Of a DNA stretch of 64,000 bases, positions 3,271-53,794 are shown one piece after another. Position 1 is the stretch's first letter. Each line of letters starts with the position of its first letter. Location: positions 1-64,000 of the IMG/VR virus record IMGVR_UViG_3300044591_002232; one strand, written 5' to 3'. The notes beneath the pieces are model-generated. The model was not told the origin of the DNA and searched no databases. It saw only the letters and a program-made list of their open reading frames with translations. Position numbers and translations under genes: made by a program.

Positions 3271-4251
3271 ATGAATTTCGTTAAATATGCATTGGAGAAT
3301 GGTGGAACAATTAAACCTCTACTTATAAACCCAGAAGACCTTTCGGGACCATCAATCACAAATCCTTCTGTCTTCATTTATCAGAACAGAATATTAGTCA
3401 ATCTTCGTAATGTAAATTATACATTATATCACGCAGAACTCAATCGGTTTGAGCATATGTGGGGTCCATTATCCTACATTCATCCAGAAAATGATATGCA
3501 CCTGAGAACCACAAATTACATTGCAGAACTAGATGACAATCTAGATACGGTTCACTATTCAAAAATAGATACTTCAGACTTTGATACCTATCAACCACAG
3601 TGGGATTTCGTGGGCCTTGAAGATGTTCGGTTAGTAGAATGGAATGATAAACTCTATGGTATTGGTGTTCGCAGAGACTTAGACGACAAAGGAACCGGAA
3701 GAATGGAAATTAGTGAATTTCAGATTTCTGATTATTCGGTCAAAGAAGTTTTTCGTTATCGTATTCCTGGACCCCCCCCAGATAAAGAATACTGTATGAA
3801 AAACTGTACTCCAATTCTAGATAAACCTTTTCATTTATTAAAGTGGTCTAATCCCACTGCACTAATGAAATTTGATATTACTGGAAAGGAAACAGAAGTC
3901 TTTCAAACTGACCCAAATCCTACTCTACAAACTGACCTAAGAGGTGGTTCTCAGGTAATTCCTTATAAAAACGGATACTTATCACTTCTTCACGAGACAC
4001 ATCTTTATAATTCAGAACAAGGAAGAAAAAACGCGACTTATCGCCATCGGTTTGTAATTTGGGATAAGGAATTTAAACTTCAAAAAGTATCAAAATTATT
4101 TTCGTTTATGAATATAAAAATTGAGTTTTGTTGTGGTCTTGTAGAATATAAAAATGATTACTTGATTACTTTTGGTGCTCAAGATAATGCTGCTTATATT
4201 TTAAAAGTTTCTAAATCATTTGTGGAGGATTTTATTCATGAACAAACTTGA
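3271..4251 (+). CDS. Beta-propeller glycoside hydrolase/phosphorylase-like protein (GH130/GH43-like clan)
   Basis: Motifs NPSV, GLEDVRL, KNCTP, LRGGSQ, IEFCCG and FGAQD are characteristic of this 5-blade family. Confidence 0.65.
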   Translation: MNFVKYALENGGTIKPLLINPEDLSGPSITNPSVFIYQNRILVNLRNVNYTLYHAELNRFEHMWGPLSYIHPENDMHLRTTNYIAELDDNLDTVHYSKIDTSDFDTYQPQWDFVGLEDVRLVEWNDKLYGIGVRRDLDDKGTGRMEISEFQISDYSVKEVFRYRIPGPPPDKEYCMKNCTPILDKPFHLLKWSNPTALMKFDITGKETEVFQTDPNPTLQTDLRGGSQVIPYKNGYLSLLHETHLYNSEQGRKNATYRHRFVIWDKEFKLQKVSKLFSFMNIKIEFCCGLVEYKNDYLITFGAQDNAAYILKVSKSFVEDFIHEQT

Positions 4252-6130
4252 AGGACTTCCAACTATTCATTACATTAGTTTAGAAGAAAGCCTAGACAGA
4301 AGAACTAATTTAGAAAATTGGTTTCAAAAATATAATATAACAAACTATGTTCCTCATTTATTCAAAAGATTTGAAAATTATAATCATAATTTAATCGGAA
4401 CAAATGTGCATCTTTTGGCGGAACATTCAAAAGGTCCGATTACTTCTCATTTATGTTTACTCAGGGAATTATACGAGACTTATGATGATGAATATTTTTT
4501 GATTGTTGAAGACGATTTGTCTTTAGAAACTGTTGAACACTGGAACTTTACCTGGAAGCAATTCTATCAAAATCTTCCTAAAGATTGGAATGGTATTCAA
4601 TTAACTATTGTAAGAGAATATAATGTTAAAGCGTATTCTTTTGAAGAAAGAAGAGATAAAGACTGGTGTGTTGCTGGGTATTTAATAAAAAGAAACTATG
4701 CAAAATATCTCTTAGACTTATATTATTTTGATACTGATTTTAATCTAAACACTAGTTTTATTCCCGTAGTTGAGGACGTATTATTTTTTCATACTAATCC
4801 AAACATATATTGTTTTCCTTTATTTGTTGAGGATTTTTATAATGCAAAATCAACTTACAGAAATCCAGAACTGGTAGATGATTGTCATCATAAATCTTAT
4901 CGTAATGTTTTAAATTGGTGGGAAAATAAAGGTAAAAATTTAACTATTAATCAAATAATGAATACACAACTTAATCACATTTATCAAGAACCTCAATTTG
5001 GTGAAAATTGGTTTTCATATCCAAATCTGTATAGGAAAATGATTGAAAAATTCCCATCAGGTTCCAAGTTTGTTGAAATTGGTTCTTGGAAAGGAAAATC
5101 TTCCGCATTTATGGCAGTTGAAATTGCAAATTCCAATAAAAACATTGAGTTCTATTGTGTAGATACTTGGGAAGGAAGTGTAGAGCATCAAGATATAGAC
5201 GATTTAAAATCTTTATATGACACATTTAACCAAAATATGATGCCTTTAAAAGGCTATCATATTCCTTTAAGAATGACTTCACTTGAAGCGGTAAAAACTT
5301 TTGAAGATAAGTCTTTAGATTTTGTTTTTATTGATGCTTCTCACGAATATGAAGACGTGAAAAAAGATATTATTTCTTGGTTACCTAAGGTAAAACCAGG
5401 TGGAATTATTGCCGGACACGATTACTATCTTAATGGGACTGACTTTTTCCCTGGAGTAAAGCAAGCGGTTAATGAGACACTAAAAATTGATGAATTAGAA
5501 TTTTCTGAAGATTGTTGGATGTATAAAGTAAAATCTATATCTAATGAATTAATAGAATATTCATTAGATACTGAAAATGCGGAAAAAAATTATAATCTCG
5601 CAAAGTGGTATGAAAGTCAGGGTCATACTGCACCAGCACATATCTATTACTTGAGAGCAGCAGAAAGAAGTGAAGATAATCTTTTGGCATACTCCGCATT
5701 AATTCGTGGGTCATTCTGCTATGGGGCACAAAAATCAAGAGATTCTAGTGAAAAAGTATTACTAGAAAATGCTCTTGTGTTGCTACCCAAAAGACCCGAA
5801 GCATATTATTTTCTTTCGTTGATATATGAAAGAAAACAAGAATGGCAACATTCTTACATTTATGCAACACTAGGTCTAAATTGCTATGAAAATAACGATG
5901 AATGCATAAACATTAATATTCCAGAATATTCCGGGAAACATTTGCTTATTTTTCAAAAGGCAATTTCTTCTTGGTGGTGGGGAAAAGGAGATGAAAGTAG
6001 AGGACTTTTAGAATTATTATGCGATAATTATTGGAATGTTTTAGATGTGACACATAAATCTTTAGTCGAAGAAAACGCAAAAAAAGTTGGAGCAAAATTT
6101 GAAAAAAGACTACATTTCAACTTTCAGTAA
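4238..6130 (+). CDS. Fusion: GT25-like glycosyltransferase + class I SAM methyltransferase + TPR
   Basis: ATG 4238 follows a GGAGG RBS. GT25-like motifs YISLEESLDRR and LIVEDD; MTase motifs VEIGSWKGKSS, FVFIDASHEY and AGHDY; C-terminal TPR-like helices (PKRPEAYYFLS). Confidence 0.8.
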   Translation: MNKLEGLPTIHYISLEESLDRRTNLENWFQKYNITNYVPHLFKRFENYNHNLIGTNVHLLAEHSKGPITSHLCLLRELYETYDDEYFLIVEDDLSLETVEHWNFTWKQFYQNLPKDWNGIQLTIVREYNVKAYSFEERRDKDWCVAGYLIKRNYAKYLLDLYYFDTDFNLNTSFIPVVEDVLFFHTNPNIYCFPLFVEDFYNAKSTYRNPELVDDCHHKSYRNVLNWWENKGKNLTINQIMNTQLNHIYQEPQFGENWFSYPNLYRKMIEKFPSGSKFVEIGSWKGKSSAFMAVEIANSNKNIEFYCVDTWEGSVEHQDIDDLKSLYDTFNQNMMPLKGYHIPLRMTSLEAVKTFEDKSLDFVFIDASHEYEDVKKDIISWLPKVKPGGIIAGHDYYLNGTDFFPGVKQAVNETLKIDELEFSEDCWMYKVKSISNELIEYSLDTENAEKNYNLAKWYESQGHTAPAHIYYLRAAERSEDNLLAYSALIRGSFCYGAQKSRDSSEKVLLENALVLLPKRPEAYYFLSLIYERKQEWQHSYIYATLGLNCYENNDECININIPEYSGKHLLIFQKAISSWWWGKGDESRGLLELLCDNYWNVLDVTHKSLVEENAKKVGAKFEKRLHFNFQ

Positions 6131-7684: not shown

Positions 7685-9010
7685 ATGTTCAAAATTTCTG
7701 AAAAAGCCAACCCTAATTATCTTGCGGAGATCGTTGTATTAAATAATCTGCGACCACACCCAAACGCAGATAGATTGCAAATCGCCACAATTCAAGGAAA
7801 TAGTGTGATTGTTTCTCTTGATGCCAAAGAAGGGGATGTTTATGTTTATTTCCCATTAGAGTGCGCCATAAATAAAGAATTTCTTTCTTGGAGTAATTCG
7901 TTTTCCGATAAGACACTTAATAACGACAAAGAAGTGGCTGGATTCTTTAATACGAAAGGTCGTGTGAGGGCAGTTAAACTCCGTGGAATCCCATCACAAG
8001 GTTATGCTCTTCCGGCCCAAAAATTTCTTGATTGGCTAGAAGAAAAGACTGGAAAATCCATTTCTCTTAAAGAAGAATGGATCGGAAAGGAGTTTGATTC
8101 ATATGATGATATTCTGATCTGTGAGAAATATGTAAGTCCTCTAGTCCTTAAAAATCAGAATAAAGAGAAAAAGAATCAAAAGAAAGTTGTTCGTGAGCCA
8201 AAAGTGGTGGACGGACAATTCCGCTTCCATCCTGATACTCTTCAACTGAAGAAATCTATTCATAATATCTCTCCAAATGATTATATTTCTATTACACGAA
8301 AACTTCATGGAACTTCCTGGGTGGCAAGTCGCCTTCTTTGTAATAAAAAACTGACTCGATTTGAAAAAATCCTGAAGCGTTTTGGTATCAAAATTCAAGA
8401 TACTCATTACGATCTTCTTTGGGCCTCTCGTAGAGTTCTAAAGAACGGTTTTCTAGAAATCGGGAATAAAGATCATTTCTATTCTTATGATCTCTGGGAA
8501 GAAATCGCCAAATCAGTCGAATATGCCATTCAAGATTCCATTACTCTTTATGGTGAAGCAGTGGGGTACACGAAAACCGGGGCGTACATTCAAACCGGAT
8601 ATGATTATGGCTGCCCCGCCGGGCAGTTTGCAACTTATGTCTACCGAATTACAACAACCAATCATTCTGGGCAGGTTTATGAATTTTCTCATAGGCAAGT
8701 CAAGGACTATTGCGAAAAATATGGTCTGAATATGGTTCCAGAGATTTATTATGGAAAAGCAAAGGACTTATATCCCGAACTTTCCGTGAATGATCATTGG
8801 CATCAAAACTTCCTTGATCGTCTTATTGGAGATTATCTTGAAAAAGACTGTGAACTGTGCAAATCTAAGAAAGTACCAGATGAAGGTGTCTGTCTAAGAA
8901 AGGATATTTTTGATTCTGAAATTTATAAACTAAAATCCTTCAAATTCCTAGAATGGGAAACTAAGGAATTGGACAACGAAAACTTTGTAGATTTGGAGTC
9001 AGAAAATTGA
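7685..9010 (+). CDS. ATP-dependent RNA ligase with N-terminal OB-fold (Rnl2/DRB0094-like)
   Basis: N-terminal PHPNADRL; nucleotidyltransferase motifs KLHGTS, LYGEAVG, EGVCLR and KLKS. Confidence 0.85.
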   Translation: MFKISEKANPNYLAEIVVLNNLRPHPNADRLQIATIQGNSVIVSLDAKEGDVYVYFPLECAINKEFLSWSNSFSDKTLNNDKEVAGFFNTKGRVRAVKLRGIPSQGYALPAQKFLDWLEEKTGKSISLKEEWIGKEFDSYDDILICEKYVSPLVLKNQNKEKKNQKKVVREPKVVDGQFRFHPDTLQLKKSIHNISPNDYISITRKLHGTSWVASRLLCNKKLTRFEKILKRFGIKIQDTHYDLLWASRRVLKNGFLEIGNKDHFYSYDLWEEIAKSVEYAIQDSITLYGEAVGYTKTGAYIQTGYDYGCPAGQFATYVYRITTTNHSGQVYEFSHRQVKDYCEKYGLNMVPEIYYGKAKDLYPELSVNDHWHQNFLDRLIGDYLEKDCELCKSKKVPDEGVCLRKDIFDSEIYKLKSFKFLEWETKELDNENFVDLESEN

Positions 9011-18287: not shown

Positions 18288-19201
18288 CCTAGAAACTATG
18301 TTCACTAAATGTCGAAGTTCAGTTTGACAAAAATGGAATTCCTACTTTTGAGATTGAAAAATGACTGATGATCAAATCGTTAAAATTGTTATGAAATATT
18401 TTCTTCCTTATAGTGATGGTGAGGAGGGGGATTTACAATGGTGGGGTAAACATCAAGATATATTAGATTTCGCCCAGGCAATGTATAAGCAAGGTTATCA
18501 CCAAGGAACTTTTGATGAAAGTGCTCGTTACATTGGGGAAGATTATTGATGACTGAAACACCTAAAATAGACAAATTCATTGACGAAATATTCTTCTTAA
18601 AATCATCACACAAACTCTTAGAAAACCTTTTTGATGAAATTGGTCCATATAAGCATGGTGAAATTTCTTCTGAATTGTGGTACAAAGTTTGCAACCACTT
18701 TAATTTTGATGATAGTGAATAAATTCCAATTGTAAAATGGGGAAGATTAACTGAAAAATGATTGACCAAATGCAAAAAGAATTTGACGAATGGTTCTATG
18801 GCTTCTATGGTCGATTCTCATTCAGAATAGAGTATTTTTATGAGGACTGTGGAGTAGAGGATGTAGAAACTCGCAGAAAATTACTTCTTAGATAGATTAA
18901 GTCCGCTTTTGAAGTTGGTTATGAGAGTGGTTATAACCAAGGACGTGATGTTATGATGTAACTGGAGAGCAATGATGACTAGAAACCCCATCGCAATTTC
19001 TGATAATTTCGTTCTTTGTGAAGATGGAACGATTTGGAGGTGGAACAAAAGAAGTTCTGCTTTTTACTACGCTCTTGAACATTGGGAAAAGATGATACCT
19101 ATTCCAGATGATGAAGAATATCAAAAACAATGTGATTTCCACAAAGAACTTTATACTGATTATTGTGAAAAACTTCAAAGAGGGAAATTAGGTGGTAAAA
19201 C

Positions 19202-19414
19202 ATGGACCCATTAGAAGAAAAAAGAATGTATTCTTATTTTGGTCGAATCCCATCTATTGACTTGTCTGATTATGAGTACCATATTTTTCTTACTTGTGCA
19301 ACTGCAGAAGAACTAGAGAAAGATATTATTAAAAAAGAAACATTGGTGACAATTGCTAAAATGTTGGGGAAAGATTTGACCAAGTGGGGATGGGATCGAC
19401 TGGACACTCAATAA
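19202..19414 (+). CDS. Hypothetical protein, paralogue of 17593..17841
   Basis: Shared ATxEELExDxxKxETL motif. Confidence 0.65.
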   Translation: MDPLEEKRMYSYFGRIPSIDLSDYEYHIFLTCATAEELEKDIIKKETLVTIAKMLGKDLTKWGWDRLDTQ

Positions 19415-20023
19415 TCTGGCACACTACTCTTGCTGAGTGGCGTGCTTTTGGTTTATAATACTAAAGTAAATCCTGGAGCAACAACATGACTGACGAACAA
19501 CTAATTGAAAAAGTGGCCGAAATTCTCTTTAAAGAAGAAGAACTTGATTGCCTTTACATTTATGACAATCTTGAGGTTCTTTTTATCGATGAAAGGCCCG
19601 AACTTCGTAAAAAGTATATAGAATGGCAAAAGCATGAAGAACTTCGGGCAAAGGAGCAAGAAGTAATGGAATTAGGATTTCGACTAGCAAAAGCACAAAG
19701 AGAACTTGAGGAGATTAAGGGACAGTGAACAATCCTAAACTATCTGCATTGGACCTTTCCGTAATTCTTGATACACTCACTAGAACTCTATCAATTGCGG
19801 GGTTTGAACAGGCTCTGGGTGGTTATACTAAAGATGCCAGAGAAGCCGTTCTTGAAAAAGTTTATGCAATTATGGACAATATGGAAATGGAAAATTTATA
19901 ATTATGATTTTTATAGTAATTATTTTACTGTTGATATTGGCGGGATACCGCATTGAAATAAAATTTGGAGACCTTGATGACTAAAGCTGAAATTTCAAAC
20001 CTAATTACACCAGAATTTCCACC

Positions 20024-20230
20024 ATGCAGAATAATTTAAAAACACTTGACGAACATAATAAGATTGTTGAAGAATTAAGAAAAATTCAACCGACCGGCCA
20101 TACTGGAATCGCCTGTCCGAATTGTGGGAATGAACTTTTTGATATTTCCCCTGGACTTGTTCTACTATCTAATCCACCACAATATAGAGTTTTTTGTAGA
20201 GTATGCAATTGGATGGGGTGTAGGTACTAA
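20024..20230 (+). CDS. Zinc-ribbon protein
   Basis: CPNCG...CRVC. Confidence 0.65.
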   Translation: MQNNLKTLDEHNKIVEELRKIQPTGHTGIACPNCGNELFDISPGLVLLSNPPQYRVFCRVCNWMGCRY

Positions 20231-20511
20231 TGAAATTATCTAATTACAGGATTAAAAAAGTCACAAAACCTAATGGTAAAGTTTGGTATTTTCCACAGAG
20301 AAAGATTCTGGGATTTTTGTGGCGTAATATAAGCAGCGGATATTCAGATTTTCATTGGGCAAATGACAAAATTATAGAGGATTATGAATCTTATTTGGGG
20401 GATTTAGTTTAATAGAATTTGCCCGAGAAATGTATAAAAGAGGGCAACAAGAACTTAACCAAATCAAATAATTTCTAGTATCATTAAAACACAACTAATT
20501 GGAGTAATTTT

Positions 20512-20700
20512 ATGAGCATTTCGACTAATGGTCAACTTTGCTATGGGTGTCTTTTTGAAGAAGACTATGAATTTCCATGGAGTAATGATGAGTTTGAATA
20601 TGATATTGAGTTATGGTGGAGACATATTAAGGGGTTTGTAAATCCCATAGAAACTCCTTATGATGGAAAGGATCATAAACAGTTAATCATTCGCTACTAA
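20512..20700 (+). pseudogene. Gene interrupted by IS607
   Basis: Removing 20672-22430 rejoins ...TPYDGK to DHGIDVINVKDIKKIIEELENE* in frame. Confidence 0.6.
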
Positions 20701-20736
20701 ATAGTAACGTTAAACAACAAACTTTACTAAATAAAT

Positions 20737-21330
20737 ATGTATGTAACTTTAAGGGAGGCAAGAAAACAACTAGGACTTCATCCAAATACCCTTAGAAAGT
20801 ATGCCGATGAGGGGATTATTGAAACAATAAAAACTCCATCTGGACAACGAAGATTCAATGTTGAATCTTTTATAAAACAAAAACAAAATAGTTTACAAAC
20901 AATTCTTTACTGCAGAGTTTCAAGTGCTAGACAAAAAGACGACCTCCAAAATCAAAAAAATTATCTCATCTCAAAGTACCCAGGAGCAGAGGTTATTATT
21001 GATGTCGGCTCTGGACTCAATTTTAAACGAAGAGGTTTGCGTTCCATTTTGGAACGATTATTGCAGGGAGATTCAATCCAACTTGTGGTTGCCCAGCGTG
21101 ACCGACTTTGCAGATTCGGATTTGACCTCATTGAATATCTCGTCGTTAAAAACGGTGGAGAAATCGTGGTTCTCGATCAAATCGAGCACAGTCCAGAAGG
21201 AGAACTTGTATCCGACATCCTTTCTATCATCCATGTTTTCTCTTGTAGAATACATGGGATGCGAAAGTATAAAAATCAAATCAAAGAAGATAAGGATTTA
21301 CCCAAACCAAACTCAAAGACAAATCCTTAG
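20737..21330 (+). CDS. tnpA: IS607 transposase (MerR-like HTH + serine recombinase)
   Basis: YVTLREARKQLGLHPNTLRKY HTH; YCRVSS catalytic Ser; DVGSGLNFKR. Confidence 0.95.
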   Translation: MYVTLREARKQLGLHPNTLRKYADEGIIETIKTPSGQRRFNVESFIKQKQNSLQTILYCRVSSARQKDDLQNQKNYLISKYPGAEVIIDVGSGLNFKRRGLRSILERLLQGDSIQLVVAQRDRLCRFGFDLIEYLVVKNGGEIVVLDQIEHSPEGELVSDILSIIHVFSCRIHGMRKYKNQIKEDKDLPKPNSKTNP

Positions 21331-22411
21331 ACAATGGTTTGGTGCATCAAGATACACTTATAATGAAACCGTTAAGTTTTTAAAAGAACCAGATACTAAG
21401 GCATCTTGGAAATCAATAAAAACTGGTTTGATTCATTCTTTACCCGATTGGGCGGAAGAAATTCCTTATCAAATTAAATCTGTTGCCGTAAGAGATTGCT
21501 GTAAGGCAGTTTCTATGTGTAAACGAAAAAATAGAGGAATTCCACCAGAAGATTGGCATGAAGTTAAATTTAGAAGCAGACGTGAACCAAAACAAACAAT
21601 TTACGTTCCTAAGACTTCTATATCTAAAAATGGTGTTTATCACACTATTTTAGGGAAATTAAAAATGAGTGAAATGCTTCCCGACAACATTATGGATTCA
21701 AGATTAACATTAGATAATGGTAGATACTTTTTAATAATTCCTTACGAAGAAAAAACAATTCCATGTGAGAACCAAGCAAGAGTTGTTTCTTTAGATCCAG
21801 GAGTTAGAATATTCCAGACATTTTATAACCCAGAATTTTCCGGGGCTATTGGTGATGGCGACATTGGTAGAATAACCAGATTATGTTATCATCTTGATTC
21901 TCTAATCTCAAAACGAGATAAGTCTAAGTCTAGAAAAAAATATAGACTCAATAAGGCTATCAAACGAATGAGAAATAAAATCAAAGATTTGGTCGATGAA
22001 ATTCATCATAAGACTGCAAGGTTTTTGGTTGATAATTTTGATATTATTCTTCTTCCTTCATTTGATGTAAGTCAAATGGTTAAAAAGGGTAAGAGAAAAA
22101 TCAACTCTAAAACGACCAGATCTATGTTGACATGGGCTCATTATAGATTTAAGTGTTTTCTTAAAGACAAATGTGAAGAATTTAATAAGGTTCTTCTTAT
22201 TGTTAATGAGGCCTATACATCAAAAACAGTGTCTTGGAATGGAAAAATTAATTACTCTTTAGGTGGATCTAAAGTTGTTAAAGACAAAAACCATTGTGTC
22301 CCTAGAGATATTAATGGAGCCCGAAATATTTGGGTAAAAAGCGTCTCAAGAATTCTTGAGGCTTTGGGAGATAGCCCCTCAAGTAGCAATACTTGTGCAT
22401 TGTTAACGTAA
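21002..22411 (+). CDS. tnpB: IS607 TnpB with Fanzor-like rearranged RuvC (start uncertain: GTG 20924 or ATG 21002)
   Basis: SLDPG (RuvC-I), ILLP in place of the canonical Glu, NEAYTSKT (relocated Glu), RDINGARNI (RuvC-III); Zn-finger cysteines absent. Confidence 0.85.
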   Translation: MSALDSILNEEVCVPFWNDYCREIQSNLWLPSVTDFADSDLTSLNISSLKTVEKSWFSIKSSTVQKENLYPTSFLSSMFSLVEYMGCESIKIKSKKIRIYPNQTQRQILRQWFGASRYTYNETVKFLKEPDTKASWKSIKTGLIHSLPDWAEEIPYQIKSVAVRDCCKAVSMCKRKNRGIPPEDWHEVKFRSRREPKQTIYVPKTSISKNGVYHTILGKLKMSEMLPDNIMDSRLTLDNGRYFLIIPYEEKTIPCENQARVVSLDPGVRIFQTFYNPEFSGAIGDGDIGRITRLCYHLDSLISKRDKSKSRKKYRLNKAIKRMRNKIKDLVDEIHHKTARFLVDNFDIILLPSFDVSQMVKKGKRKINSKTTRSMLTWAHYRFKCFLKDKCEEFNKVLLIVNEAYTSKTVSWNGKINYSLGGSKVVKDKNHCVPRDINGARNIWVKSVSRILEALGDSPSSSNTCALLT

Positions 22412-22490
22412 GTTAGCAAAAATCTATCGGATCACGGAATTGATGTTATTAATGTAAAGGATATTAAGAAGATTATTGAGGAACTTGAAA

Positions 22491-22730
22491 ATGAGTAAGG
22501 CCCAAAAAATCTGGGAGGCATTTAAGGGAGAACTCACCCAGCCCGCAACTGATGATATGAGAGAAGCCTTGGCAACCGCATTTCGTGAATTAAATACTTT
22601 GTGTTCAGAATCACTATCACCAAACCAGGATATGGATGAGTTTTATGCTAGGCTCTATGGTAGTAGCGATTATGTCGTTTATTCTGACGAAATTGACAAA
22701 GTAGTAAATGAACTAGAAGAACTAGAATGA
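22491..22730 (+). CDS. Hypothetical protein (MSKAQKIWEAF...)
   Basis: ATG overlaps the reconstructed upstream stop. Confidence 0.65.
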   Translation: MSKAQKIWEAFKGELTQPATDDMREALATAFRELNTLCSESLSPNQDMDEFYARLYGSSDYVVYSDEIDKVVNELEELE

Positions 22731-23385
22731 ATTCAAAGAGAAAGATAAAACGAAGACTATCCTATGAGGTCTCTTTTTGGTATAATGGAAATAGAGAAAC
22801 AAAATATTTTCATTCGGCCAAGAAAATGAGGACCTATGTTAATGGTATTCACGAAATTACTGAAGTTGATTTCCCAACTGTGATCATTGAAAAAACTTGG
22901 TGTTATCGAAACCACCACCCAAAACATAAATGGTGGTACGAATCCACTGAACCTAATCAATTCATTTGTTATGAGAAATATTAGGACACCTGACCAACCG
23001 TCCACTCTGCCTTGTGGTGGAGTGGACTTTGACTTACAATAACGAAGTAAACCACCGAACTCCTTATGAATAGTTTGAACTATTATCTTTACAGATTGAG
23101 ATTGACTATTGATGGGTGGAAGTATTGGATGACCACTCCTTATGAAGATTTGCAAAAAATTACGAGTCCATATAATCCAGATGAACTATACTGGAGTGTC
23201 CGTAAAAGTGGACATACAATTGCCGCAAACTTTTGGTATATGGTAAATGATGGTTATTATGATATGATTGATGAATGGGAGGATTTATGAGTTGTATAAA
23301 GCAGGACACTTGACCAACCGTCCACTCTGTCTTGTGGTGGGGTGGACTTTGCCTTATAATGCCCTTGTAACCCACCGAATTCCTT

Positions 23386-23760
23386 ATGAACGAACAACTA
23401 CAGGCTCAAATTACGCAAATTCTCTCTCAGATTATGGTATCAGTCGGAGAAGTCAAGGATTTTTCTGTTGCCCAACTACCTGACATTGCCCAGCAGTATA
23501 TCACTTATGGCCTATGGGCAAATGCTTTTTATGCTGTATTTTCTGGTATGGTTGTTATTGTATGTGTAGGTCTAGGTTGGGGCATTATTAAATATGCTAA
23601 CGATGAAGAAGATGGAGATGTTTTTGTGGGGTTTCCTATCCTCTTTGCTATGGGATTTGTTAGTTTTTTTATTCTTCTTGACAAAATCCATAACCTCATT
23701 ATGGTACTGACCGCACCCAAAGTGTGGTTCCTGCTTGAACTTAAAAACCTTCTTTCTTGA
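23386..23760 (+). CDS. Membrane protein
   Basis: Two TM segments; follows an operator cassette. Confidence 0.7.
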   Translation: MNEQLQAQITQILSQIMVSVGEVKDFSVAQLPDIAQQYITYGLWANAFYAVFSGMVVIVCVGLGWGIIKYANDEEDGDVFVGFPILFAMGFVSFFILLDKIHNLIMVLTAPKVWFLLELKNLLS

Positions 23761-23958
23761 TATTATGGGATTTTTTCTGCTTTTTCTCTATCTTCTAGCT
23801 CTATTTCTTGGTTTTGTTTTTGTTGCCGGAGATTCTAATTCTAGACCAATAAAAAGAGAATCCACTGTAAAATTCTGCATCGAGAAACCTGTAGAATGTA
23901 AAAAAGAGTTTGATTTTTATCAAATGCGCGAAGAATTCAATTCATCCAAGGAGAACAA

Positions 23959-24684
23959 ATGACCTACATTATCAAACACGACTTTAATCAAAATGTTCCT
24001 TACTATGTAAGGCTAGTTGACGACAAGACTTTTGATGAGATTTACGACCCAACTTTTGCTACTCAATTCAATACCAAAAACGAGGCCCAAAAGTGGATTG
24101 ACACTTACTCATCAATGGCCGAACACTCACAGGTTGTTGAAACTGCTGATGCGATTCAAGAGTATGAGAAATGGGTTAAGTCTGGTTCAATTAGGAGAAC
24201 TCTGGCCTGTGTTAATACTTCAATGTCTAGGCCCTACAATGATGAACCTCTTGATGAGGTAATTGATTGGTGGATTTATGCAAAAGAGAATGATAGAGAG
24301 ATCAAATTTAAGCATTATAAAACTTGGCCACAACTTTATAGTATTTCCAAACATCTTTGGGATGTAAATCGATATTCTAATCGTAATTATACAAATTATT
24401 ATATTTCTTTTGAAATTTTCACCCGGAGAGATGGCAAGTTTGAAGATTTTGAATCAGAATTAAATAAGGTCATTGACAAAGTTACCTATAAAGATGATGA
24501 AGGTTATTTAATCTTCTCAATTTTTGACCATTATCTTTCTGAGCACGGTAATAGTGTTTCTTTGCTTATTCATCCAGAATCTAAACACGTAAAGATTAGT
24601 GGACGATACTCTTATGATAACAATGAGTTTTCTTCCCTTGAAGATGCATTTAATTATATGAAAAAGGAGCGTTATTATGAGTGA
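23959..24684 (+). CDS. Hypothetical protein
   Basis: 241-aa ORF with GGAG RBS. Confidence 0.75.
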   Translation: MTYIIKHDFNQNVPYYVRLVDDKTFDEIYDPTFATQFNTKNEAQKWIDTYSSMAEHSQVVETADAIQEYEKWVKSGSIRRTLACVNTSMSRPYNDEPLDEVIDWWIYAKENDREIKFKHYKTWPQLYSISKHLWDVNRYSNRNYTNYYISFEIFTRRDGKFEDFESELNKVIDKVTYKDDEGYLIFSIFDHYLSEHGNSVSLLIHPESKHVKISGRYSYDNNEFSSLEDAFNYMKKERYYE

Positions 24685-26386: not shown

Positions 26387-26500
26387 TTGATTTAAAAACT
26401 CCAAAGGAGTTCTCTTAACCTCACGGTTAAAAATTCCTGCTTCAACGCTTACGCCTTCAGCAAATTCGCTTCGGGTCTTATCTCTGCTCCACAGGCAAAC
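26387..26500 (-). ncRNA. Probable TnpB omegaRNA scaffold / element right end
   Basis: Minus strand reads TTGAAGCAGGAA...CCGTGAGG...AACTCCTTTGGAGTT hairpin, then TCAA, as in IS605 right ends. Confidence 0.55.
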
Positions 26501-27582
26501 CCTGCCAATCCGACAGTTAAAATATTTTTTGCCGCATTAATGTCTCTATCGTGAACTGCTCCACAATCATGACAAGTCCATTCACGGACACTTAACGGCA
26601 TAGAAGATTGAATAGAACCACAAGAACTACAAGTTTTACTTGAAGGGAAAAATCTATCAACTTTCAATAGAGTTCTCCCATACCAGTCGCACTTATATTT
26701 TAATAAAAAAATAAATTGCGACCAAGAAACTTCAGCAATTGCTCTTGCTAATTTGTGGTTTTTCAACATACCAGACACATTTAAGTCCTCAACCACTATC
26801 GTTTGATTCTCACGAACAAGTTGAGTGCTTATTTTGTGATGATAATCTAATCTTGTATCTACAATCTTTTGATGTAGTTTAGCAACTTTAACTCTTGCTT
26901 TCTCACGATTTTTAGAACCTTTCTGCTTTTTATATAATCTTTGATTGAGGATTTTTAATCTTTTTTGGACTTTTCTTAACCACTTTGGATTGGTAATTTT
27001 ATCACCGTTAGAAGTAGCAAAGAAACAATCAATACCTAAATCAAGACCTATCACTTTATCTGTTGGTTCAAGTTGTTTGATTTCTTCTTGACACAACATA
27101 CTAATCATCCATCTTCCGCTTGGTTCAAGTGTGATGGTTATAGTAGAAGGATAAGAAGGGATTTGACGAGACCAACGAATATTCAAGGGTTCTTTTGATT
27201 TTGCTATATAAATCTTACCTTCTTTATACTTAAAGGCAGATTTAGTTAATTCACAAGAGTTTCTGTTTTTTCTCTTCTTAAATCTTGGATATTTACTTTT
27301 CTTTTGGAAAAAGTTTTTAAATCCAGTTTGTAGATGTTGAAGAGATTGTTGTAGAGGAACACAAGAAACTTCATTTAACCATTCATACTCTTCTTTTTTC
27401 TTGAGTTCCGTCAAAAGAGCACTTGTTTGATTGTATCCTACAGAGTTTTTATTTTGATGCCATTCTTTGGTTCTATAATCAAGAAAATGATTATAGACCA
27501 CACGGCAACAACCAAGAGTTTTTCTTAAAAGAACCTCTTGACTTTCTGTAGGATAAAATCTAAACTTGTATGCTCTATACAT
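26449..27582 (-). CDS. tnpB: IS200/IS605-type TnpB RNA-guided nuclease, no adjacent tnpA
   Basis: RAYKFRFYP, GLDLG, VVEDL, CSSCG/CHDCG, DRDINAAKNI; all three RuvC acidic residues present. Confidence 0.95.
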   Translation of the reverse strand: MYRAYKFRFYPTESQEVLLRKTLGCCRVVYNHFLDYRTKEWHQNKNSVGYNQTSALLTELKKKEEYEWLNEVSCVPLQQSLQHLQTGFKNFFQKKSKYPRFKKRKNRNSCELTKSAFKYKEGKIYIAKSKEPLNIRWSRQIPSYPSTITITLEPSGRWMISMLCQEEIKQLEPTDKVIGLDLGIDCFFATSNGDKITNPKWLRKVQKRLKILNQRLYKKQKGSKNREKARVKVAKLHQKIVDTRLDYHHKISTQLVRENQTIVVEDLNVSGMLKNHKLARAIAEVSWSQFIFLLKYKCDWYGRTLLKVDRFFPSSKTCSSCGSIQSSMPLSVREWTCHDCGAVHDRDINAAKNILTVGLAGFACGAEIRPEANLLKA

Positions 27583-29676: not shown

Positions 29677-30876
29677 CTATTGATTTTCTAGACGCTTCAA
29701 CGCAGACGCTAAATGATGTTGGACACCATTTAGACTTACTTCCGCTCCACGTCCGTAATCGACATACTCTGCCGATGTTAATTCTTGACCCGAAAGGTCT
29801 AACCACCCTTTTTTAAGGATGTTGATAGAGGCATTTAAGTCTCTATCGCGATGAGAGCCACAAGAAGGACAAGTCCATTCACGAACACTTAAAGGCATCT
29901 TGTCTTCTTTATGTCCACAGTTAGAACAGGTCTTGGAACTAGGGTAAAACCTATCTATTTTGGTCAAAGTTTTTCCGTACCAGTTACACTTGTACTCCAA
30001 CATAGAAACAAAAGTAGACCAAGAGGCATCACTAATGGATTTTGCAAGTTTGTGGTTCTTTAACATTCCAGAAACATTTAAGTCTTCAACAACAATCAAA
30101 TCAAATGTCTTAACAAGTTCTGTTGAAATATTATGCAAGAAATAATTTCTTGAGTTAGTAATGTTTTCGTGTACTTTAGCAACTTTAATACGTTGTCTAT
30201 TGTAACGATTACTACCTTTCTTTTTACGACTTAAATGTTTCTGTGCTTTTTTAAGTTTAGATTGGTTCTTTCTAAACCATCTTGGGTTATTGATGACTTG
30301 ACCATTTGATAAAGTCATTAGTTCTTTTAAACCCAAATCAATACCTACTACTTTACCAGTAGAGGGTATTGGATTGAGTTCTTGTTGGACTAAAATTGAA
30401 ACAAAATACTTTCCGGTTGGAGTTTTAGAAACAGTAATGCTTCTAAAATCGGCTTCTTCAGGGATATTTCGGTCCAGAACAATTTTGACCCAACCAATTT
30501 TTTCGATCCTTATTGAACATTTTTCTTGATCAAGTTTAAATCTAGTTTTTTCTGGAAGCCTAAATGATTGTCTATTGGTCTTTTTCTTGAATTTCGGCTT
30601 TCCAAGTTTAACCTTCCTTTTTTTGTTAAAGTATTGTTTCTTAAACTCAACAAAATCCATTCTTTTTTGTTGAAGTGTTGATGCCGATACTTCTTTAAGG
30701 AACTCAAACTCCTCTTGGTCTTTTAGTGTTTTTTCATTTACTATGGTACCATCATTATTGTTAAAATTTTCAACTAACTTATTCCAAACAAAACGAACAC
30801 AACCAAAAGTTTTAGCAAATAAAACCTCTTGTTCTTTTGTAGGATAAATCCTATATTTGTATGCTTTTAAATGCAT
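29677..30876 (-). CDS. tnpB: IS200/IS605-type TnpB, no adjacent tnpA
   Basis: KAYKYRIYP, GIDLG, VVEDL, CSNCG/CPSCG, DRDLNASINI; RuvC triad intact. Confidence 0.95.
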   Translation of the reverse strand: MHLKAYKYRIYPTKEQEVLFAKTFGCVRFVWNKLVENFNNNDGTIVNEKTLKDQEEFEFLKEVSASTLQQKRMDFVEFKKQYFNKKRKVKLGKPKFKKKTNRQSFRLPEKTRFKLDQEKCSIRIEKIGWVKIVLDRNIPEEADFRSITVSKTPTGKYFVSILVQQELNPIPSTGKVVGIDLGLKELMTLSNGQVINNPRWFRKNQSKLKKAQKHLSRKKKGSNRYNRQRIKVAKVHENITNSRNYFLHNISTELVKTFDLIVVEDLNVSGMLKNHKLAKSISDASWSTFVSMLEYKCNWYGKTLTKIDRFYPSSKTCSNCGHKEDKMPLSVREWTCPSCGSHRDRDLNASINILKKGWLDLSGQELTSAEYVDYGRGAEVSLNGVQHHLASALKRLENQ

Positions 30877-30882
30877 GTCACT

Positions 30883-30983
30883 TTAATTGGGTCGTTATAT
30901 CTATTTAGTAAATTTTATTTTTAGGGAGAGATTTATTCTCTCCCGCTTGAAAAGAACGACCCAATCAAGCACTTTTATTTAGT
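30883..30983 (-). promoter_or_regulatory. Twin late-promoter boxes and nested hairpins upstream of tnpB
   Basis: ACTAAATA at 30976-30983 and 30902-30909; 14-nt inverted repeat 30883-30896/30955-30968 enclosing a GGGAGAGA/TCTCTCCC hairpin. Confidence 0.7.
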
Positions 30984-31174
30984 AAAGTTTTTATTGGAAA
31001 TTTATTGATTTTATGCATTTTTGTATTTATACCCATATTTTTCTCAAGATGTAAAAAAATTGCCCAGGCATCCGGGGTTTTAGAGACCCTCAAGGACACC
31101 TGATCAACTGGCACAATTACCCATAAACACCCCCACTAATCCCCTAAACTACAATTGCCTTAAACAAAACACCC

Positions 31175-53081: not shown

Positions 53082-53160
53082 ACTCCACTGGCGAAACGGT
53101 AAACGCGGCAGACTCAAAATCTGCTTCTTCGGATTCCCAGTTCAAATCTGGGGTGGAGTA
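53082..53160 (+). tRNA. trnL: tRNA-Leu (anticodon CAA)
   Basis: Acceptor ACTCCAC/GTGGAGT, D-stem GCG/CGC, anticodon arm GCAGA-CTCAAAA-TCTGC, TC-TTCG-GA variable arm, T-arm CCCAG-TTCAAAT-CTGGG; CCA not encoded. Confidence 0.92.
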
Positions 53161-53794
53161 CTAACCTACTATTCTTTATTATGAACACTTTACATCAAGA
53201 CATTGAAAAAATTACTAATATGAGTTGCGGCGATGTAATTGATATTAATATGTCTGAAGAATCTGGTGGAGAAGTTCATCGTCATAATGATGGCTTGGTT
53301 CTTTATGAAATCCCATTATATGGTGGTGAAGGTAATTTAGTCGCAACATACCAGTTTAATAAAGAAGGTATTGAAGAATTAGTTACAACAGTCCATTCTT
53401 GGACATAGTAAGTATTTTTTACCATGAACACCACAGAAACCATTAATCTTCTCACAAAAAGAATCAAAAATCTTAAAGAAGAACTAGACCAAAATCCACA
53501 ATATAAACAAAACATTGTGGATTCTATTCTAGACGACATTTCTTATTATCAAAACCAACTGAATTCTTTACGAGACCAATGACTGAAGAAAATTTCTATC
53601 TTTTGTGGGAAAGATTCGCTCTTTCTGAAATTACAAAAAGTATTCCTGATAATGTAGAAGAATTTTGTAAACAGAATGAAATTACTGTTGATTATTTTAT
53701 AGAGGAGTGGTTGTGACGATTTGAAAGGTGCCCACCTCTTAAGGCCCAGCCGCAATCCATCCACTAAAATTACCAAGCATTTCACAAGAAACTT

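What the first reader, a model, noticed from the sequence alone, without database searches (positions are those of the whole stretch)
20672..22430. Phage-borne IS607 with a Fanzor-like (pro-Fanzor) TnpB lacking the zinc finger
Seen: RuvC-I is DPG; the usual RuvC-II Glu position holds Pro (IILLPSF); a Glu sits in NEAYTSKT; the CxxC pairs are replaced (TVSWNG...); and there is an N-terminal FWN..C..LWLP..SWFS extension. Two ACTAAATA late boxes (20696, 20726) lie in the left end. Established: the rearranged catalytic site typifies Fanzors and the IS607 TnpB clade, described largely from cyanobacteria, proposed as their ancestor. Inference: phages may carry this lineage between hosts, and this is a compact Zn-free RNA-guided nuclease candidate.
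Basis: partly seen in the sequence, partly recalled or inferred. Interest (0 to 1): 0.7.

Follow-up and report, generated by a model that had tools for sequence, protein, structure and literature searches.

The report
Phage IS607 with Fanzor-like, overprinted TnpB
A jumbo cyanophage carries an intact, mobile IS607 insertion sequence whose RNA-guided nuclease gene (tnpB) is of the Fanzor-ancestor type, has lost its zinc finger, and starts inside the transposase gene in another reading frame, a conserved arrangement I did not find described in the papers searched.

Summary
Window 20672-22430 is a 1759-bp IS607 element bounded by GG. The same element (95.5% identical) sits in a different viral contig with unrelated flanks, and 82% copies sit in at least two more contexts. 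It interrupts a phage ORF, and an IS-less allele exists in a lake metagenome.

TnpA is a full-length IS607 serine recombinase. TnpB has DPG, Pro at the canonical RuvC-II position, a relocated Glu (NEAYTSKT) and no CxxC pairs. Its best solved relative is mimivirus Fanzor2. The three other TnpBs in this phage are canonical.

Zinc-finger loss is clade-wide, not phage-specific. Relatives occur in cyanobacteria, Poribacteria, Latescibacterota and Chloroflexota, and a graded series from intact to absent zinc finger is visible.

It is encoded in the +1 frame of tnpA. This frame is open, under purifying selection and has its own start in nearly all relocated-Glu IS607 elements examined, but not in canonical IS607 of the same genomes. 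The predicted structure aligns it with the Fanzor2 N-terminal domain.

CTAAATA is this phage's most enriched upstream motif, so the promoter reading of the boxes is plausible. Nuclease activity, ωRNA and translation of the long form remain untested.

The parts
20670..20671 (+). Left-flank GG, the presumed crossover dinucleotide and 3' end of a purine-rich TAM-like flank (AAAGG)
   Evidence: Homology with L006 begins right after GG(+1). Left flanks of other copies are TAGGG, GAGGG and AAAGG. GG crossover and a GGG TAM for IS607 are described in PMC10711439.
20672..22430 (+). Complete IS607-family insertion sequence, 1759 bp
   Evidence: This is the only segment shared with L006, at 95.5% identity, with unrelated flanks. 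Copies at 82% identity sit in other contexts (L090, L094) and a tnpA-deleted derivative is L092.
20672..20736 (+). Left end, with two TACTAAATA boxes (20695-20703 and 20725-20733)
   Evidence: The boxes sit where cellular relatives carry repeated (G/A)CTAA(C/T) motifs, the inverse of GTTAGC in the right end. CTAAATA is also the phage's top upstream motif. There is 1 substitution in 65 nt against L006.
20737..21330 (+). tnpA, IS607 serine recombinase (197 aa; MerR-type HTH plus resolvase catalytic domain; presumed nucleophile Ser62 at 20920-20922)
   Evidence: NF033518 at 178 bits (cut-off 110), PF00239 and PF00376.
21002..22411 (+). tnpB, proposed long form (469 aa). ATG 21002 is preceded by GGAGCAGAGG. 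It overlaps tnpA by 329 nt in the +1 frame.
   Evidence: The frame is open from 20876. The MSALDS start is conserved in the phage subfamily. Substitution density is reduced in 21002-21327 (2.1% against 5.5%). NF040570 guided_TnpB scores 137.6 bits.
21002..21253 (+). Overprinted N-terminal extension (84 aa here) with near-invariant PFW, LP and TVEKSWF motifs
   Evidence: Searches cover the conservation and selection tests. In the AF2 model, residues 14-37 and 50-68 are structured, and the aligned span with the Fanzor2 structure starts at model residue 13 / chain residue 53, so it covers the NTD.
21254..22411 (+). TnpB core (WED/REC/RuvC/TNB). Alternative short starts are ATG 21233 and ATG 21254, neither with a Shine-Dalgarno motif.
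   Evidence: PF12323, PF01385 and PF07282. Gene callers give 392 or 385 aa. VIA-align Z 26.5 to ISDra2 TnpB from model residue 90.
21794..21802 (+). RuvC-I motif D-P-G
   Evidence: Asp and Gly are invariant and Pro is present in at least 90% of 90 relatives. The three canonical TnpBs of the same phage have D-L-G.
22055..22057 (+). Pro at the canonical RuvC-II Glu position (IILLPSF)
   Evidence: Present in at least 90% of the clade. Canonical TnpBs of this genome have VVEDLNV.
22208..22210 (+). Relocated catalytic Glu (NEAYTSKT), six residues before the former first Cys
   Evidence: Invariant in 90 relatives. It aligns with Glu467 of ApmFz2 (PMC11832414).
22229..22306 (+). Degenerate TNB / zinc-finger region (VSWNG...HC), with no CxxC pair
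   Evidence: L085 and L097 keep both CxxC pairs, while Chloroflexota copies and the A8 consensus keep only the first Cys.
22307..22309 (+). RuvC-III Asp (RDINGARNI)
   Evidence: Invariant.
22231..22430 (+). Putative ωRNA scaffold and right end. The last ~95 nt are almost invariant and the terminal motif is GTTAGCAAAAATCTATCGG.
   Evidence: MFE z-score is -3.5. There are 4 variable sites in ~94 nt among copies that are 82% identical overall, with one compensatory change, CAAG..CTTG to CAGG..CCTG. Two base pairs covary family-wide. The right-end motif is conserved across phyla. No RNA data.
22431..22450 (+). Right flank, the predicted guide-matching sequence of the ωRNA (ATCACGGAATTGATGTTATT)
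   Evidence: Inferred from the IS607 TnpB architecture in PMC10711439. Not tested here.
20512..20671 (+). 5' part of the phage ORF interrupted by the IS. Its frame resumes at 22431 and ends at 22495-22497, in an ATGAGTAA overlap with the next gene.
   Evidence: Read directly from the sequence. An IS-less allele reading ...YLDGD|HGID... is in run X20.

Best explanation
Window 20672-22430 is an intact and probably still mobile IS607-family insertion sequence in the genome of a freshwater jumbo cyanophage.

Proposed mechanism (inferred except where marked shown):
1. Transposition. TnpA is a serine recombinase. It moves the element as double-stranded DNA by crossover at GG, binding the (G/A)CTAA-type repeats of the left end and the inverted GTTAGC/GTTAAC repeats of the right end.
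2. TnpB type (shown). tnpB belongs to the DPG / relocated-Glu lineage that includes pro-Fanzors and eukaryotic Fanzors. It sits in a large sub-branch in which the C4 zinc finger has decayed.
3. Long form. Translation most likely starts at ATG 21002, inside tnpA in the +1 frame. This gives a 469-aa protein whose overprinted N-terminal extension packs on the RuvC/WED core, like the N-terminal domain of mimivirus Fanzor2.
4. Guide RNA. The 3' ~100-200 nt of the transcript, running across the right end, would form the ωRNA. Its guide would be the flank beginning at 22431.
5. Homing. The ribonucleoprotein would cut IS-less alleles that carry a purine-rich ...GG TAM, using Asp 21794, Glu 22208 and Asp 22307. 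Recombinational repair from an IS-bearing copy would then keep or spread the element among co-infecting phage genomes.
6. Expression. This is probably driven by the phage's own CTAAATA(G) promoter-like boxes in the left end.

Shown here: element boundaries, mobility between contexts, family assignment, the motif pattern, and the conserved, selected overlapping frame.
For: Boundaries and mobility
- The element is 95.5% identical in L006 with unrelated flanks. Copies at 82% identity lie in L090 and L094, and a deletion derivative in L092.
- An IS-less allele is present in run X20.
- Between the window and L006, the tnpB-only region shows 34 synonymous and 25 non-synonymous changes.

Family assignment
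- TnpA: NF033518 at 178 bits. TnpB: NF040570 at 137.6 bits.
- Best solved relative by sequence is 9b0l Fanzor2, E 2e-20 and 1e-34.
- By structure, 9b0l scores Z 26.4 over 405 residues, in a span that reaches back to model residue 13. Canonical TnpBs align only from residue ~90.
- D, E and D are invariant in 90 relatives. The other three TnpBs in the genome are canonical.

Overprinted extension
- The +1 frame of tnpA has a mean of 1.3 stops, against 12.4 in the +2 frame, across 70 loci.
- 63 of 70 loci have no stop in the +1 frame, where synonymous shuffling gives 4.37 stops and a mean P(0) of 0.008.
- Four-fold-site identity is 0.475 in the overlap, against 0.27-0.30 elsewhere.
- The start codon and Shine-Dalgarno motif are conserved.
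- The extension is 32% identical (E 6e-11) to that of a TnpB whose core is 35% identical, in Microcoleus phage. None of 300 synonymous shuffles reached that score.
- Control within five cyanobacterial genomes: 17 of 18 IS607 loci with a relocated-Glu-type tnpB downstream have 0-1 stops in the +1 frame, whereas the 10 loci with a canonical tnpB or with no tnpB match and a closed frame have 7-17.
- In the AF2 model (pLDDT 84.3), parts of the extension are structured.

Right end and ωRNA
-.

Promoter motif
-.
Against: - There are no RNA or protein data. No RNA run was listed, so the ωRNA, the long-form start and nuclease activity are all inferred.
- The TNB/zinc-finger domain helps load the target strand in relatives. 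Its decay could mean reduced or altered activity.
- The phage copy has lost the first ~65 residues of the extension seen in cellular relatives. There are two extra stops in tnpA codons 20-46.
- Much of the extension has low pLDDT.
- Sequence similarity of the extension to the Fanzor2 NTD is weak: 5-9 bits, reached by 1 of 500 and 7 of 1000 shuffles.
- The tree has a very distant outgroup and contains no Fanzors.
- The box nearest tnpA lies only 3 nt from the ATG, which is too close to serve as its promoter.
Confidence: 0.8

Rival explanations
1. TnpB is the short ~385-392-aa protein (start at 21233 or 21254). The open frame upstream is an untranslated by-product of tnpA sequence constraints.
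For: Gene callers give 392 or 385 aa for the window's protein and several relatives. Much of the extension is low-confidence in the AF2 models. The +1 frame inherits some conservation from tnpA: the +2 frame also gives a local score of 115.
Against: The +1 frame is stop-free in 63 of 70 loci, against 4.4 stops expected. Canonical IS607 tnpA genes in the same genomes have 7-17 stops there. Wobble positions of tnpA are constrained only in the overlap. The observed +1-frame similarity beats all 300 synonymous shuffles. The start and Shine-Dalgarno motif are conserved, and neither 21233 nor 21254 has one. Many database entries are already 510-600 aa.
Confidence: 0.08
2. The zinc-finger-less TnpB no longer cuts DNA. 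It acts as an RNA-guided DNA binder or regulator (TldR-like), or as a transposition accessory factor.
For: All four zinc-ligand Cys positions are lost. Nuclease-dead TnpB derivatives are known (papers listed).
Against: D, E and D are invariant in 90 diverse relatives. The gene remains linked to tnpA and to conserved transposon ends, and occurs in many copies per genome and in several insertion contexts. PMC10691335 notes zinc-finger loss in large branches of apparently active TnpBs.
Confidence: 0.1
3. The two ACTAAATA boxes are only TnpA-binding subterminal repeats of the IS, not phage promoters.
For: Cellular relatives carry (G/A)CTAA(C/T) repeats at the same places, and the inverse GTTAGC in the right end. 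ACTAAATA is not enriched in the 64-kb window. The proximal box is 3 nt from the tnpA ATG. In L090 the distal box reads GCTAATAAATACTAAT.
Against: CTAAATA is the most enriched 7-mer upstream of ORFs genome-wide, 16.6-fold. TACTAAATA occurs 16 times against 4 for the reversed control, often just after terminator-like hairpins and 13-31 nt before long ORFs. A 17-nt identical stretch with the box lies upstream of another tnpB. The two roles do not exclude each other.
Confidence: 0.35
4. The window's copy is an immobile relic that merely hitch-hikes in this phage.
For: It is identical in the near-identical contigs L005 and L007, so there is no evidence of movement within this phage lineage. A decayed derivative exists, L092.
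Against: Both ORFs and both ends are intact. Near-identical and 82% copies lie in different contexts, and an IS-less allele exists. Substitutions show purifying selection.
Confidence: 0.1

Closest known systems
Pro-Fanzor IS607 TnpBs of cyanobacteria (Yoon et al. 2023, PMC10711439; also called TnpB2 or RIIr branches)
   Same: DPG in RuvC-I. Glu relocated to six residues before the zinc-finger position. Paired with an IS607 serine-recombinase TnpA. GG junctions and a purine-rich flank. Cyanobacterial or cyanophage setting. Zinc-finger-bearing members (NESYTSKTCPECG...) in Moorena and Anabaenopsis share the same tnpA-overprinted extension.
   Different: No CxxC pairs, so the regular expression that Yoon et al. 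used for their search would not retrieve this branch. Phage-borne. Relatives also occur in Poribacteria, Latescibacterota, Chloroflexota and a Desulfatirhabdium MAG, whereas the paper says 'exclusively cyanobacteria'. The paper's text and the supplements held do not mention the extension or the overlap.
Acanthamoeba polyphaga mimivirus Fanzor2 (L79; PDB 9b0l; PMC11832414)
   Same: Best solved relative by sequence (E 1e-34 with a profile) and the only one whose structural alignment also spans the N-terminal extension (Z 26.4, model 13-453 against chain 53-518). Same relocated Glu. An IS607-type element. GGG TAM, against AGG/GGG flanks here. NSW(Y/F) motif in the NTD.
   Different: About 20-22% identity. 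Fanzor2 keeps the zinc finger, has an NLS and lives in a virus of eukaryotes. Whether its NTD also overlaps tnpA was not checked.
Canonical IS200/IS605 and IS607 TnpBs (ISDra2 8exa/8h1j; ISFba1 8iaz; ISXfa1)
   Same: Same WED/REC/RuvC/TNB core fold (Z 23-26.5). The ωRNA is expected at the 3' end. Homing logic.
   Different: Those have a hydrophobic residue after the RuvC-I Asp (D-L-G in this phage's canonical copies), Glu at the canonical RuvC-II position, an intact zinc finger and no N-terminal extension. Their tnpA +1 frame is full of stops.
Phage-borne IS607 elements (Campylobacter phage CP21; the phage-related IS of Microcystis, Kuno et al. 2010, cited in PMC13565253)
   Same: IS607-family elements resident in phage genomes. 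Exchange between cyanophage and host has been proposed before.
   Different: Those were not retrieved as close relatives: CP21 matches only 34% of the query. Their TnpB type was not examined here.

Membership tests
IS607 family insertion sequence | Serine-recombinase TnpA with an N-terminal MerR-like HTH and a C-terminal catalytic domain | tested here: met
   NF033518 at 178 bits (cut-off 110). PF00376 covers residues 6-40 and PF00239 covers 56-178.
IS607 family insertion sequence | No terminal inverted repeats or target duplication. GG dinucleotide at both junctions. | tested here: met
   Junctions are AAAGG|ATCAT... and ...TATCGG|ATCAC in the window, and TAGGG|TTCAT... and ...TATCGG|TTT in L006. 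...ATCGG| is conserved in 45 relatives.
IS607 family insertion sequence | Subterminal repeat motifs in the left end, inverted in the right end (TnpA binding sites) | tested here: met
   The left end has (G/A)CTAA(C/T/A) repeats and the right end has GTTAAC/GTTAGC. Binding itself was not tested.
IS607 family insertion sequence | Mobility (the same element in different genomic contexts) | tested here: met
TnpB RNA-guided endonuclease (OMEGA) | RuvC D-E-D triad in a TnpB fold | tested here: met
   NF040570 at 137.6 bits. D265, E403 and D436 are invariant. Z 26.5 to ISDra2 TnpB. The Glu is at the alternative position.
TnpB RNA-guided endonuclease (OMEGA) | C4 zinc finger in the TNB domain | tested here: not met
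   VSWNG...HC, with no CxxC pair.
TnpB RNA-guided endonuclease (OMEGA) | ωRNA encoded at the 3' end and reading across the right end | tested here: inconclusive
   z-score -3.5, hyper-conserved last ~95 nt, and a few compensatory pairs. No Rfam match. No RNA run listed.
TnpB RNA-guided endonuclease (OMEGA) | Guide- and TAM-dependent DNA cleavage | not testable with these tools
   Needs biochemistry or an interference assay.
Pro-Fanzor / Fanzor lineage (Yoon et al. 2023) | DPG motif in RuvC-I | tested here: met
   SLDPGVR at 21788-21808.
Pro-Fanzor / Fanzor lineage (Yoon et al. 2023) | Alternative RuvC-II Glu six residues before the first zinc-finger Cys position | tested here: met
   E-AYTSKT-V, where L085 and L097 have E-AYTSKT-C.
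Pro-Fanzor / Fanzor lineage (Yoon et al. 2023) | CxxC...CxxC after the Glu (part of the authors' search pattern) | tested here: not met
   It is a search criterion rather than a stated defining character.
Pro-Fanzor / Fanzor lineage (Yoon et al. 2023) | Association with an IS607 TnpA | tested here: met
Pro-Fanzor / Fanzor lineage (Yoon et al. 2023) | Phylogenetic placement with Fanzor2 rather than canonical TnpB | tested here: inconclusive
   Sequence and profile searches rank Fanzor2 far above canonical TnpB. No Fanzor sequences could be fetched for a tree: the best 150 representatives did not reach them.
Fanzor2 | Encoded in eukaryotes or their viruses, with an N-terminal NLS | tested here: not met
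   The host genome is a cyanophage. Cellular relatives do start with a basic KSKASKTKQGK-type stretch, but the phage copy lacks it.
Fanzor2 | Structured N-terminal domain (RuvC-R, thumb) ahead of WED | tested here: inconclusive
   The aligned span with 9b0l starts at model residue 13 / chain residue 53 (residue-level correspondence not checked). Sequence support is weak.

The most novel reading that the evidence does not exclude
The whole DPG / relocated-Glu IS607 lineage (pro-Fanzors, with or without a zinc finger) makes a TnpB of about 470-600 aa. Its N-terminal 85-200 residues are overprinted on tnpA in the +1 frame, and this extension is the prokaryotic forerunner of the Fanzor2 N-terminal domain (RuvC-R, thumb, and possibly the basic NLS-like tip). 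If so, the domain thought to be unique to Fanzor2 arose in bacteria or phages by overprinting. It would physically lock tnpB to tnpA. Pro-Fanzor constructs annotated as ~390 aa would lack a functional part.
Probability: 0.45. Interest if true: 0.8.

Novelty: new variant of a known kind. Interest (0 to 1): 0.68.

Why it matters
Fanzors are the eukaryotic RNA-guided nucleases, and their bacterial ancestors (pro-Fanzors) are the bridge to TnpB and Cas12.

1. That lineage is larger and more widespread than the published zinc-finger-based search could detect. It includes phages and the sponge-associated phyla Poribacteria, Latescibacterota and Chloroflexota.
2. It tolerates complete loss of the zinc finger while keeping the catalytic triad.
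3. Its tnpB carries a conserved N-terminal domain written inside the transposase gene in another frame. This is a long, selected gene overlap that distinguishes it from canonical IS607, and it matches the position of the Fanzor2 NTD that was reported as unseen in any other available TnpB structure.

Consequences:
- Annotation: many entries are truncated, or tnpA is missed, as in Microcoleus phage My-WqHQDG.
- Biochemistry: constructs should use the long form.
- Evolution: this bears on how Fanzor2 acquired its N-terminal domain and perhaps its nuclear-import tip.
- Phage biology: an RNA-guided homing element carrying what look like phage-type promoter boxes.

Tried and rejected
- Megablast of the element against isolate phages found no match.
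- An Rfam scan of 20000-23000 gave only a chance snoRNA hit at E 0.71.
- RNAalifold on 45 right ends from the whole family returned only 6 pairs, because the variable stems align poorly. I did not build a covariance model.
- I first took the N-terminal extension for an ORF-calling artefact. I dropped that view.
- I looked for an uninterrupted copy of the disrupted phage ORF. L089 is too divergent after ~50 aa, and isolate phages gave no match. An IS-less allele was eventually seen in run X20.
- The representative search with the long-form profile returned 12,759 hits, but the best 150 did not reach Fanzor2, so no tree with Fanzors was made.
- Model coordinates are not exposed to scripts, so I could not measure active-site geometry or the contacts of the extension.
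- No RNA runs were listed.
- The GUUAGC...GUUAGC pair as an RNA hairpin: the motif changes to GGTAGC in Moorena copies, so it fits TnpA sites at the DNA level better. I left it open.
Full report
**What is there**

The window is the first 64 kb of a 249,820-bp virus record with direct terminal repeats. Its RNA ligase is 59% identical to that of the ~244-kb Synechococcus phages B3 and B23. The sequence recurs in many lake-water metagenomes. It is therefore a freshwater jumbo cyanophage.

tnpA lies at 20737-21330 and encodes a full-length IS607 serine recombinase (NF033518 at 178 bits against a cut-off of 110; MerR-type HTH plus resolvase domain). Downstream, in the +1 frame, runs a TnpB frame that is open from 20876 to 22411. 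It matches NF040570 guided_TnpB at 137.6 bits.

**Boundaries and mobility**

- A viral contig with unrelated flanks (L006) shares only window 20670-22430, at 95.5% identity.
- The element is therefore 20672-22430, 1759 bp. GG precedes the left end and CGG ends the right end, as expected for IS607 crossover at GG (PMC10711439).
- Copies at 82% identity lie in further contexts (L090/L091, L094). L092 is a derivative with tnpA deleted and a mutated right end.
- The IS interrupts a phage ORF that starts at 20512. Without the IS, the frame continues from 22431 to a stop that overlaps the next gene's ATG.
- A contig in run X20 carries an IS-less, slightly diverged allele reading ...YLDGD|HGID....
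- Between the window and L006, the tnpB-only region has 34 synonymous and 25 non-synonymous changes, which indicates purifying selection.

All are present.

| Feature | Sequence | Coordinates |
|---|---|---|
| RuvC-I | DPG | 21794-21802 |
| Canonical RuvC-II position | Pro in IILLPSF | 22055-22057 |
| Relocated Glu | NEAYTSKT | 22208-22210 |
| Former first CxxC | VSWNG | from 22229 |
| RuvC-III | RDINGARNI | Asp at 22307-22309 |

- In 90 diverse relatives the three catalytic residues are invariant, and the Pro is present in at least 90%.
- The three other TnpBs of this phage are canonical: DLG, VVEDLNV and CxxC...CxxC.
- By sequence, the best solved relative is mimivirus Fanzor2 (9b0l), at E 2e-20 for the single sequence and 1e-34 for a profile. 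ISDra2 TnpB scores E 0.6 and 5e-5.
- This is the signature that defines pro-Fanzors and Fanzors (PMC10711439, PMC11832414).

**Zinc-finger loss is clade-wide**

- More than 1,800 proteins match at E no greater than 1e-10. The nearest cellular ones are 50-58% identical.
- 484 or more genomic loci were found in cyanobacteria, and also in Poribacteria, Latescibacterota, Chloroflexota and a Desulfatirhabdium MAG.
- Nearly all of them read EAYTSKTVSW(T/N)G.
- A decay series is visible. L085 and Microcoleus phage My-WqHQDG keep both CxxC pairs. Chloroflexota copies and the consensus of the wider representative set keep only the first Cys.
- Yoon et al. searched with a pattern that requires CxxC...CxxC and concluded that pro-Fanzors are exclusively cyanobacterial. 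Their search could not have retrieved this branch.
- Zinc-finger loss in large TnpB branches is noted in general terms in PMC10691335.

**The N-terminal extension is real and overprinted on tnpA**

I first took it for an ORF-calling artefact, but the evidence goes the other way.

- *Open frame.* In 70 unique loci the tnpB frame is always +1 relative to tnpA. It is open for ~150-175 codons upstream of the TnpB core, usually from tnpA codon 19.
- *Stop counts.* The +1 frame of tnpA has a mean of 1.3 stops, against 12.4 in the +2 frame. The non-overlapping part of tnpB has 20.5 stops per 351 codons in its +1 frame.
- *Shuffle null.* 63 of 70 loci have no stop in the +1 frame, where synonymous shuffling gives 4.37 stops and a mean P(0) of 0.008.
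- *Wobble constraint.* In the most diverged pairs, four-fold-degenerate third positions of tnpA are 0.475 identical in the overlap. They are 0.30 identical in tnpA codons 1-19 and 0.27 in tnpB alone.
- *Conserved start.* In cellular members an ATG lies at tnpA codons 21-24 and is preceded by AGGAG or AAGGA, both built from the TnpA 'TLR(R/K)' codons. The product begins with a basic KSKASKTKQGK-type stretch.
- *Conserved residues.* PYW, LP and TVxKSWF are invariant or nearly so.
- *Distant relative.* The extension is 32% identical (E 6e-11) to that of the Microcoleus phage protein, whose core is only 35% identical. None of 300 synonymous-shuffled pairs reached the observed score of 161; their mean was 69 and their maximum 133.
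- *Within-genome control.* Thirty IS607 tnpA loci from five cyanobacterial genomes were examined. Of the 18 followed by a relocated-Glu-type tnpB, 17 have 0-1 stops in the +1 frame; the exception, L108, has 6. These include zinc-finger-bearing copies that read NESYTSKTCPECG. Seven loci followed by a canonical TnpB (several reading DRFYPSSKTCS.CG), and three with no tnpB match, have 7-17 stops. Two further loci without a tnpB match have 0 and 2 stops. The +2 frame has 2-21 stops across all 30.
- *Size.* The zinc-finger-bearing copies have 570-607-aa open frames with the same motifs, plus a basic patch just before the core.

The overlap is therefore a lineage trait that predates the loss of the zinc finger.

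**The extension in the phage subfamily**

- The frame opens only at tnpA codon 46.
- The first ATG is 21002, preceded by GGAGCAGAGG.
- This gives an 84-aa extension that retains all the conserved motifs, and a 469-aa protein.
- Substitutions between the window and L006 drop to 2.1% in 21002-21327. They are 4.2-5.5% in the single-coding parts.
- The short starts at 21233 and 21254 have no Shine-Dalgarno motif.

**Structure**

- With a 90-sequence alignment, AF2 gives a mean pLDDT of 84.3 and pTM of 0.81.
- In the extension, residues 14-37 (helix 19-26) and 50-68 (strand 59-63) are structured. The rest of the extension is low-confidence.
- VIA-align aligns 405 residues with Fanzor2 9b0l (Z 26.4), spanning model 13-453 and chain 53-518. 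This span reaches across the Fanzor2 NTD, residues 53-130.
- Canonical TnpBs align equally well, but only from model residue ~90.
- Sequence support for homology is weak: NSWY against (K/N)SWF, at 5-9 bits, matched or exceeded by 1 of 500 and 7 of 1000 shuffles.
- I rate homology of the extension with the Fanzor2 NTD as plausible but not shown.
- None of the papers or supplements I could search mentions the overlap or the extension.

**Transposon ends and ωRNA**

- The right end ...GTTAGCAAAAA(N)GTATCGG| is conserved across phyla.
- The left end carries (G/A)CTAA(C/T) repeats, which are the inverse of GTTAGC.
- Among copies that are 82% identical overall, the last ~95 nt are almost invariant. 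They show one compensatory change, CAAG..CTTG to CAGG..CCTG.
- Family-wide, two base pairs covary.
- The last 200 nt fold with a z-score of -3.5.
- This fits an ωRNA scaffold overlapping the 3' end of tnpB, but there are no RNA data.
- Left flanks read AAAGG, TAGGG, GAGGG and AAAGG. They resemble the GGG TAM of ISXfa1 and ApmFz2.

**The ACTAAATA boxes**

- The octamer is not enriched in the window.
- Genome-wide, however, CTAAATA is the most enriched 7-mer in the 60 nt upstream of ORFs: 28 of 257 ORFs against 1.7 expected.
- TACTAAATA occurs 16 times, against 4 for the reversed control.
- It often lies after terminator-like hairpins and 13-31 nt before long ORFs.
- The boxes sit where cellular relatives have their TnpA-site repeats.
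- Both readings may be true: IS repeats that also match the phage's promoter.
- 'Late' timing rests only on analogy with T4-type TATAAATA promoters, which I cite from my own knowledge.

**Phylogeny**

In a tree of 72 TnpB cores, the phage copies form their own clade (SH-aLRT 81). It lies outside the cellular zinc-finger-less clade (support 92) and near the zinc-finger-bearing L085. The outgroup is very distant and no Fanzors are included. This argues for a phage-resident sub-lineage, not a recent pick-up from a sampled host. Transfer between hosts is not shown.

**Verdict**

This is a real and probably active phage-borne IS607 with a pro-Fanzor-type, zinc-finger-less TnpB. That much is a new variant of a known kind. 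The tnpA-overprinted N-terminal domain is the most valuable result, and it applies to the whole lineage.

Noticed in passing
window 26449-27582 (-), 29677-30876 (-); G000:C1:72868-73959 (+): The phage carries three more tnpB genes, all canonical (DLG, VVEDLNV, CxxC...CxxC; phrog_506). No adjacent tnpA was noted. Two lie 2 kb apart on the minus strand.
   Followed up: partly
window 30902-30910 and 30976-30984 (-), compared with 20717-20733 (+): Two TACTAAATA boxes lie upstream of the canonical tnpB at 29677-30876. One shares a 17-nt identical stretch (AAACTTTACTAAATAAA) with the left end of the IS607 element.
   Followed up: partly
whole genome G000, e.g. 160815, 171239, 174248, 221936: CTAAATA(G) is the most enriched 7-mer upstream of ORFs (16.6-fold). 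It often follows terminator-like hairpins and is probably the phage's main, possibly late, promoter motif.
   Followed up: partly
run X20 laid on window 19000-24000: loose ends at 22433 and 20665: One contig carries an IS-less allele of the interrupted ORF (GATGGCGAC|CACGG), whose sequence at the would-be TAM and seed differs from the window. Another contig joins the IS to a different left flank that still ends in GAAAGG.
   Followed up: partly
L097 (Microcoleus phage My-WqHQDG, OR578706) 940-2625 and 981-1520: A 561-aa 'hypothetical protein' is a long-form pro-Fanzor TnpB with an intact zinc finger. The overlapping tnpA (179 aa) is not annotated in the record.
   Followed up: yes
L092 891-2287: A derivative of the phage-type IS has an internal deletion of about 360 nt of tnpA and a right end mutated from CGG to CTG. 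It lies next to a GIY-YIG/NUMOD3 homing-endonuclease gene.
   Followed up: partly
loci L017-L083: The zinc-finger-less relocated-Glu IS607 family is multi-copy in MAGs titled Poribacteria, Latescibacteria, Caldilineaceae and Dehalococcoidia, not only in cyanobacteria. This suggests horizontal spread beyond cyanobacteria.
   Followed up: no
L098 (Vibrio phage 355E48.1) 1222-2703, and about 20 related Vibrio phages: TnpB relatives at 34% identity are annotated as two ORFs (356 aa plus a 95-aa 'transposase'). The gene is possibly split or frameshifted. The HTH starts at residue 87, so there may be an N-terminal extension there too.
   Followed up: no
window 4220-6130; 7685-9010; 53082-53161: A fused glucosyltransferase plus DNA-methyltransferase-like ORF, an RNA ligase (phrog_968) and a tRNA-Leu(CAA) gene.
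   Followed up: no
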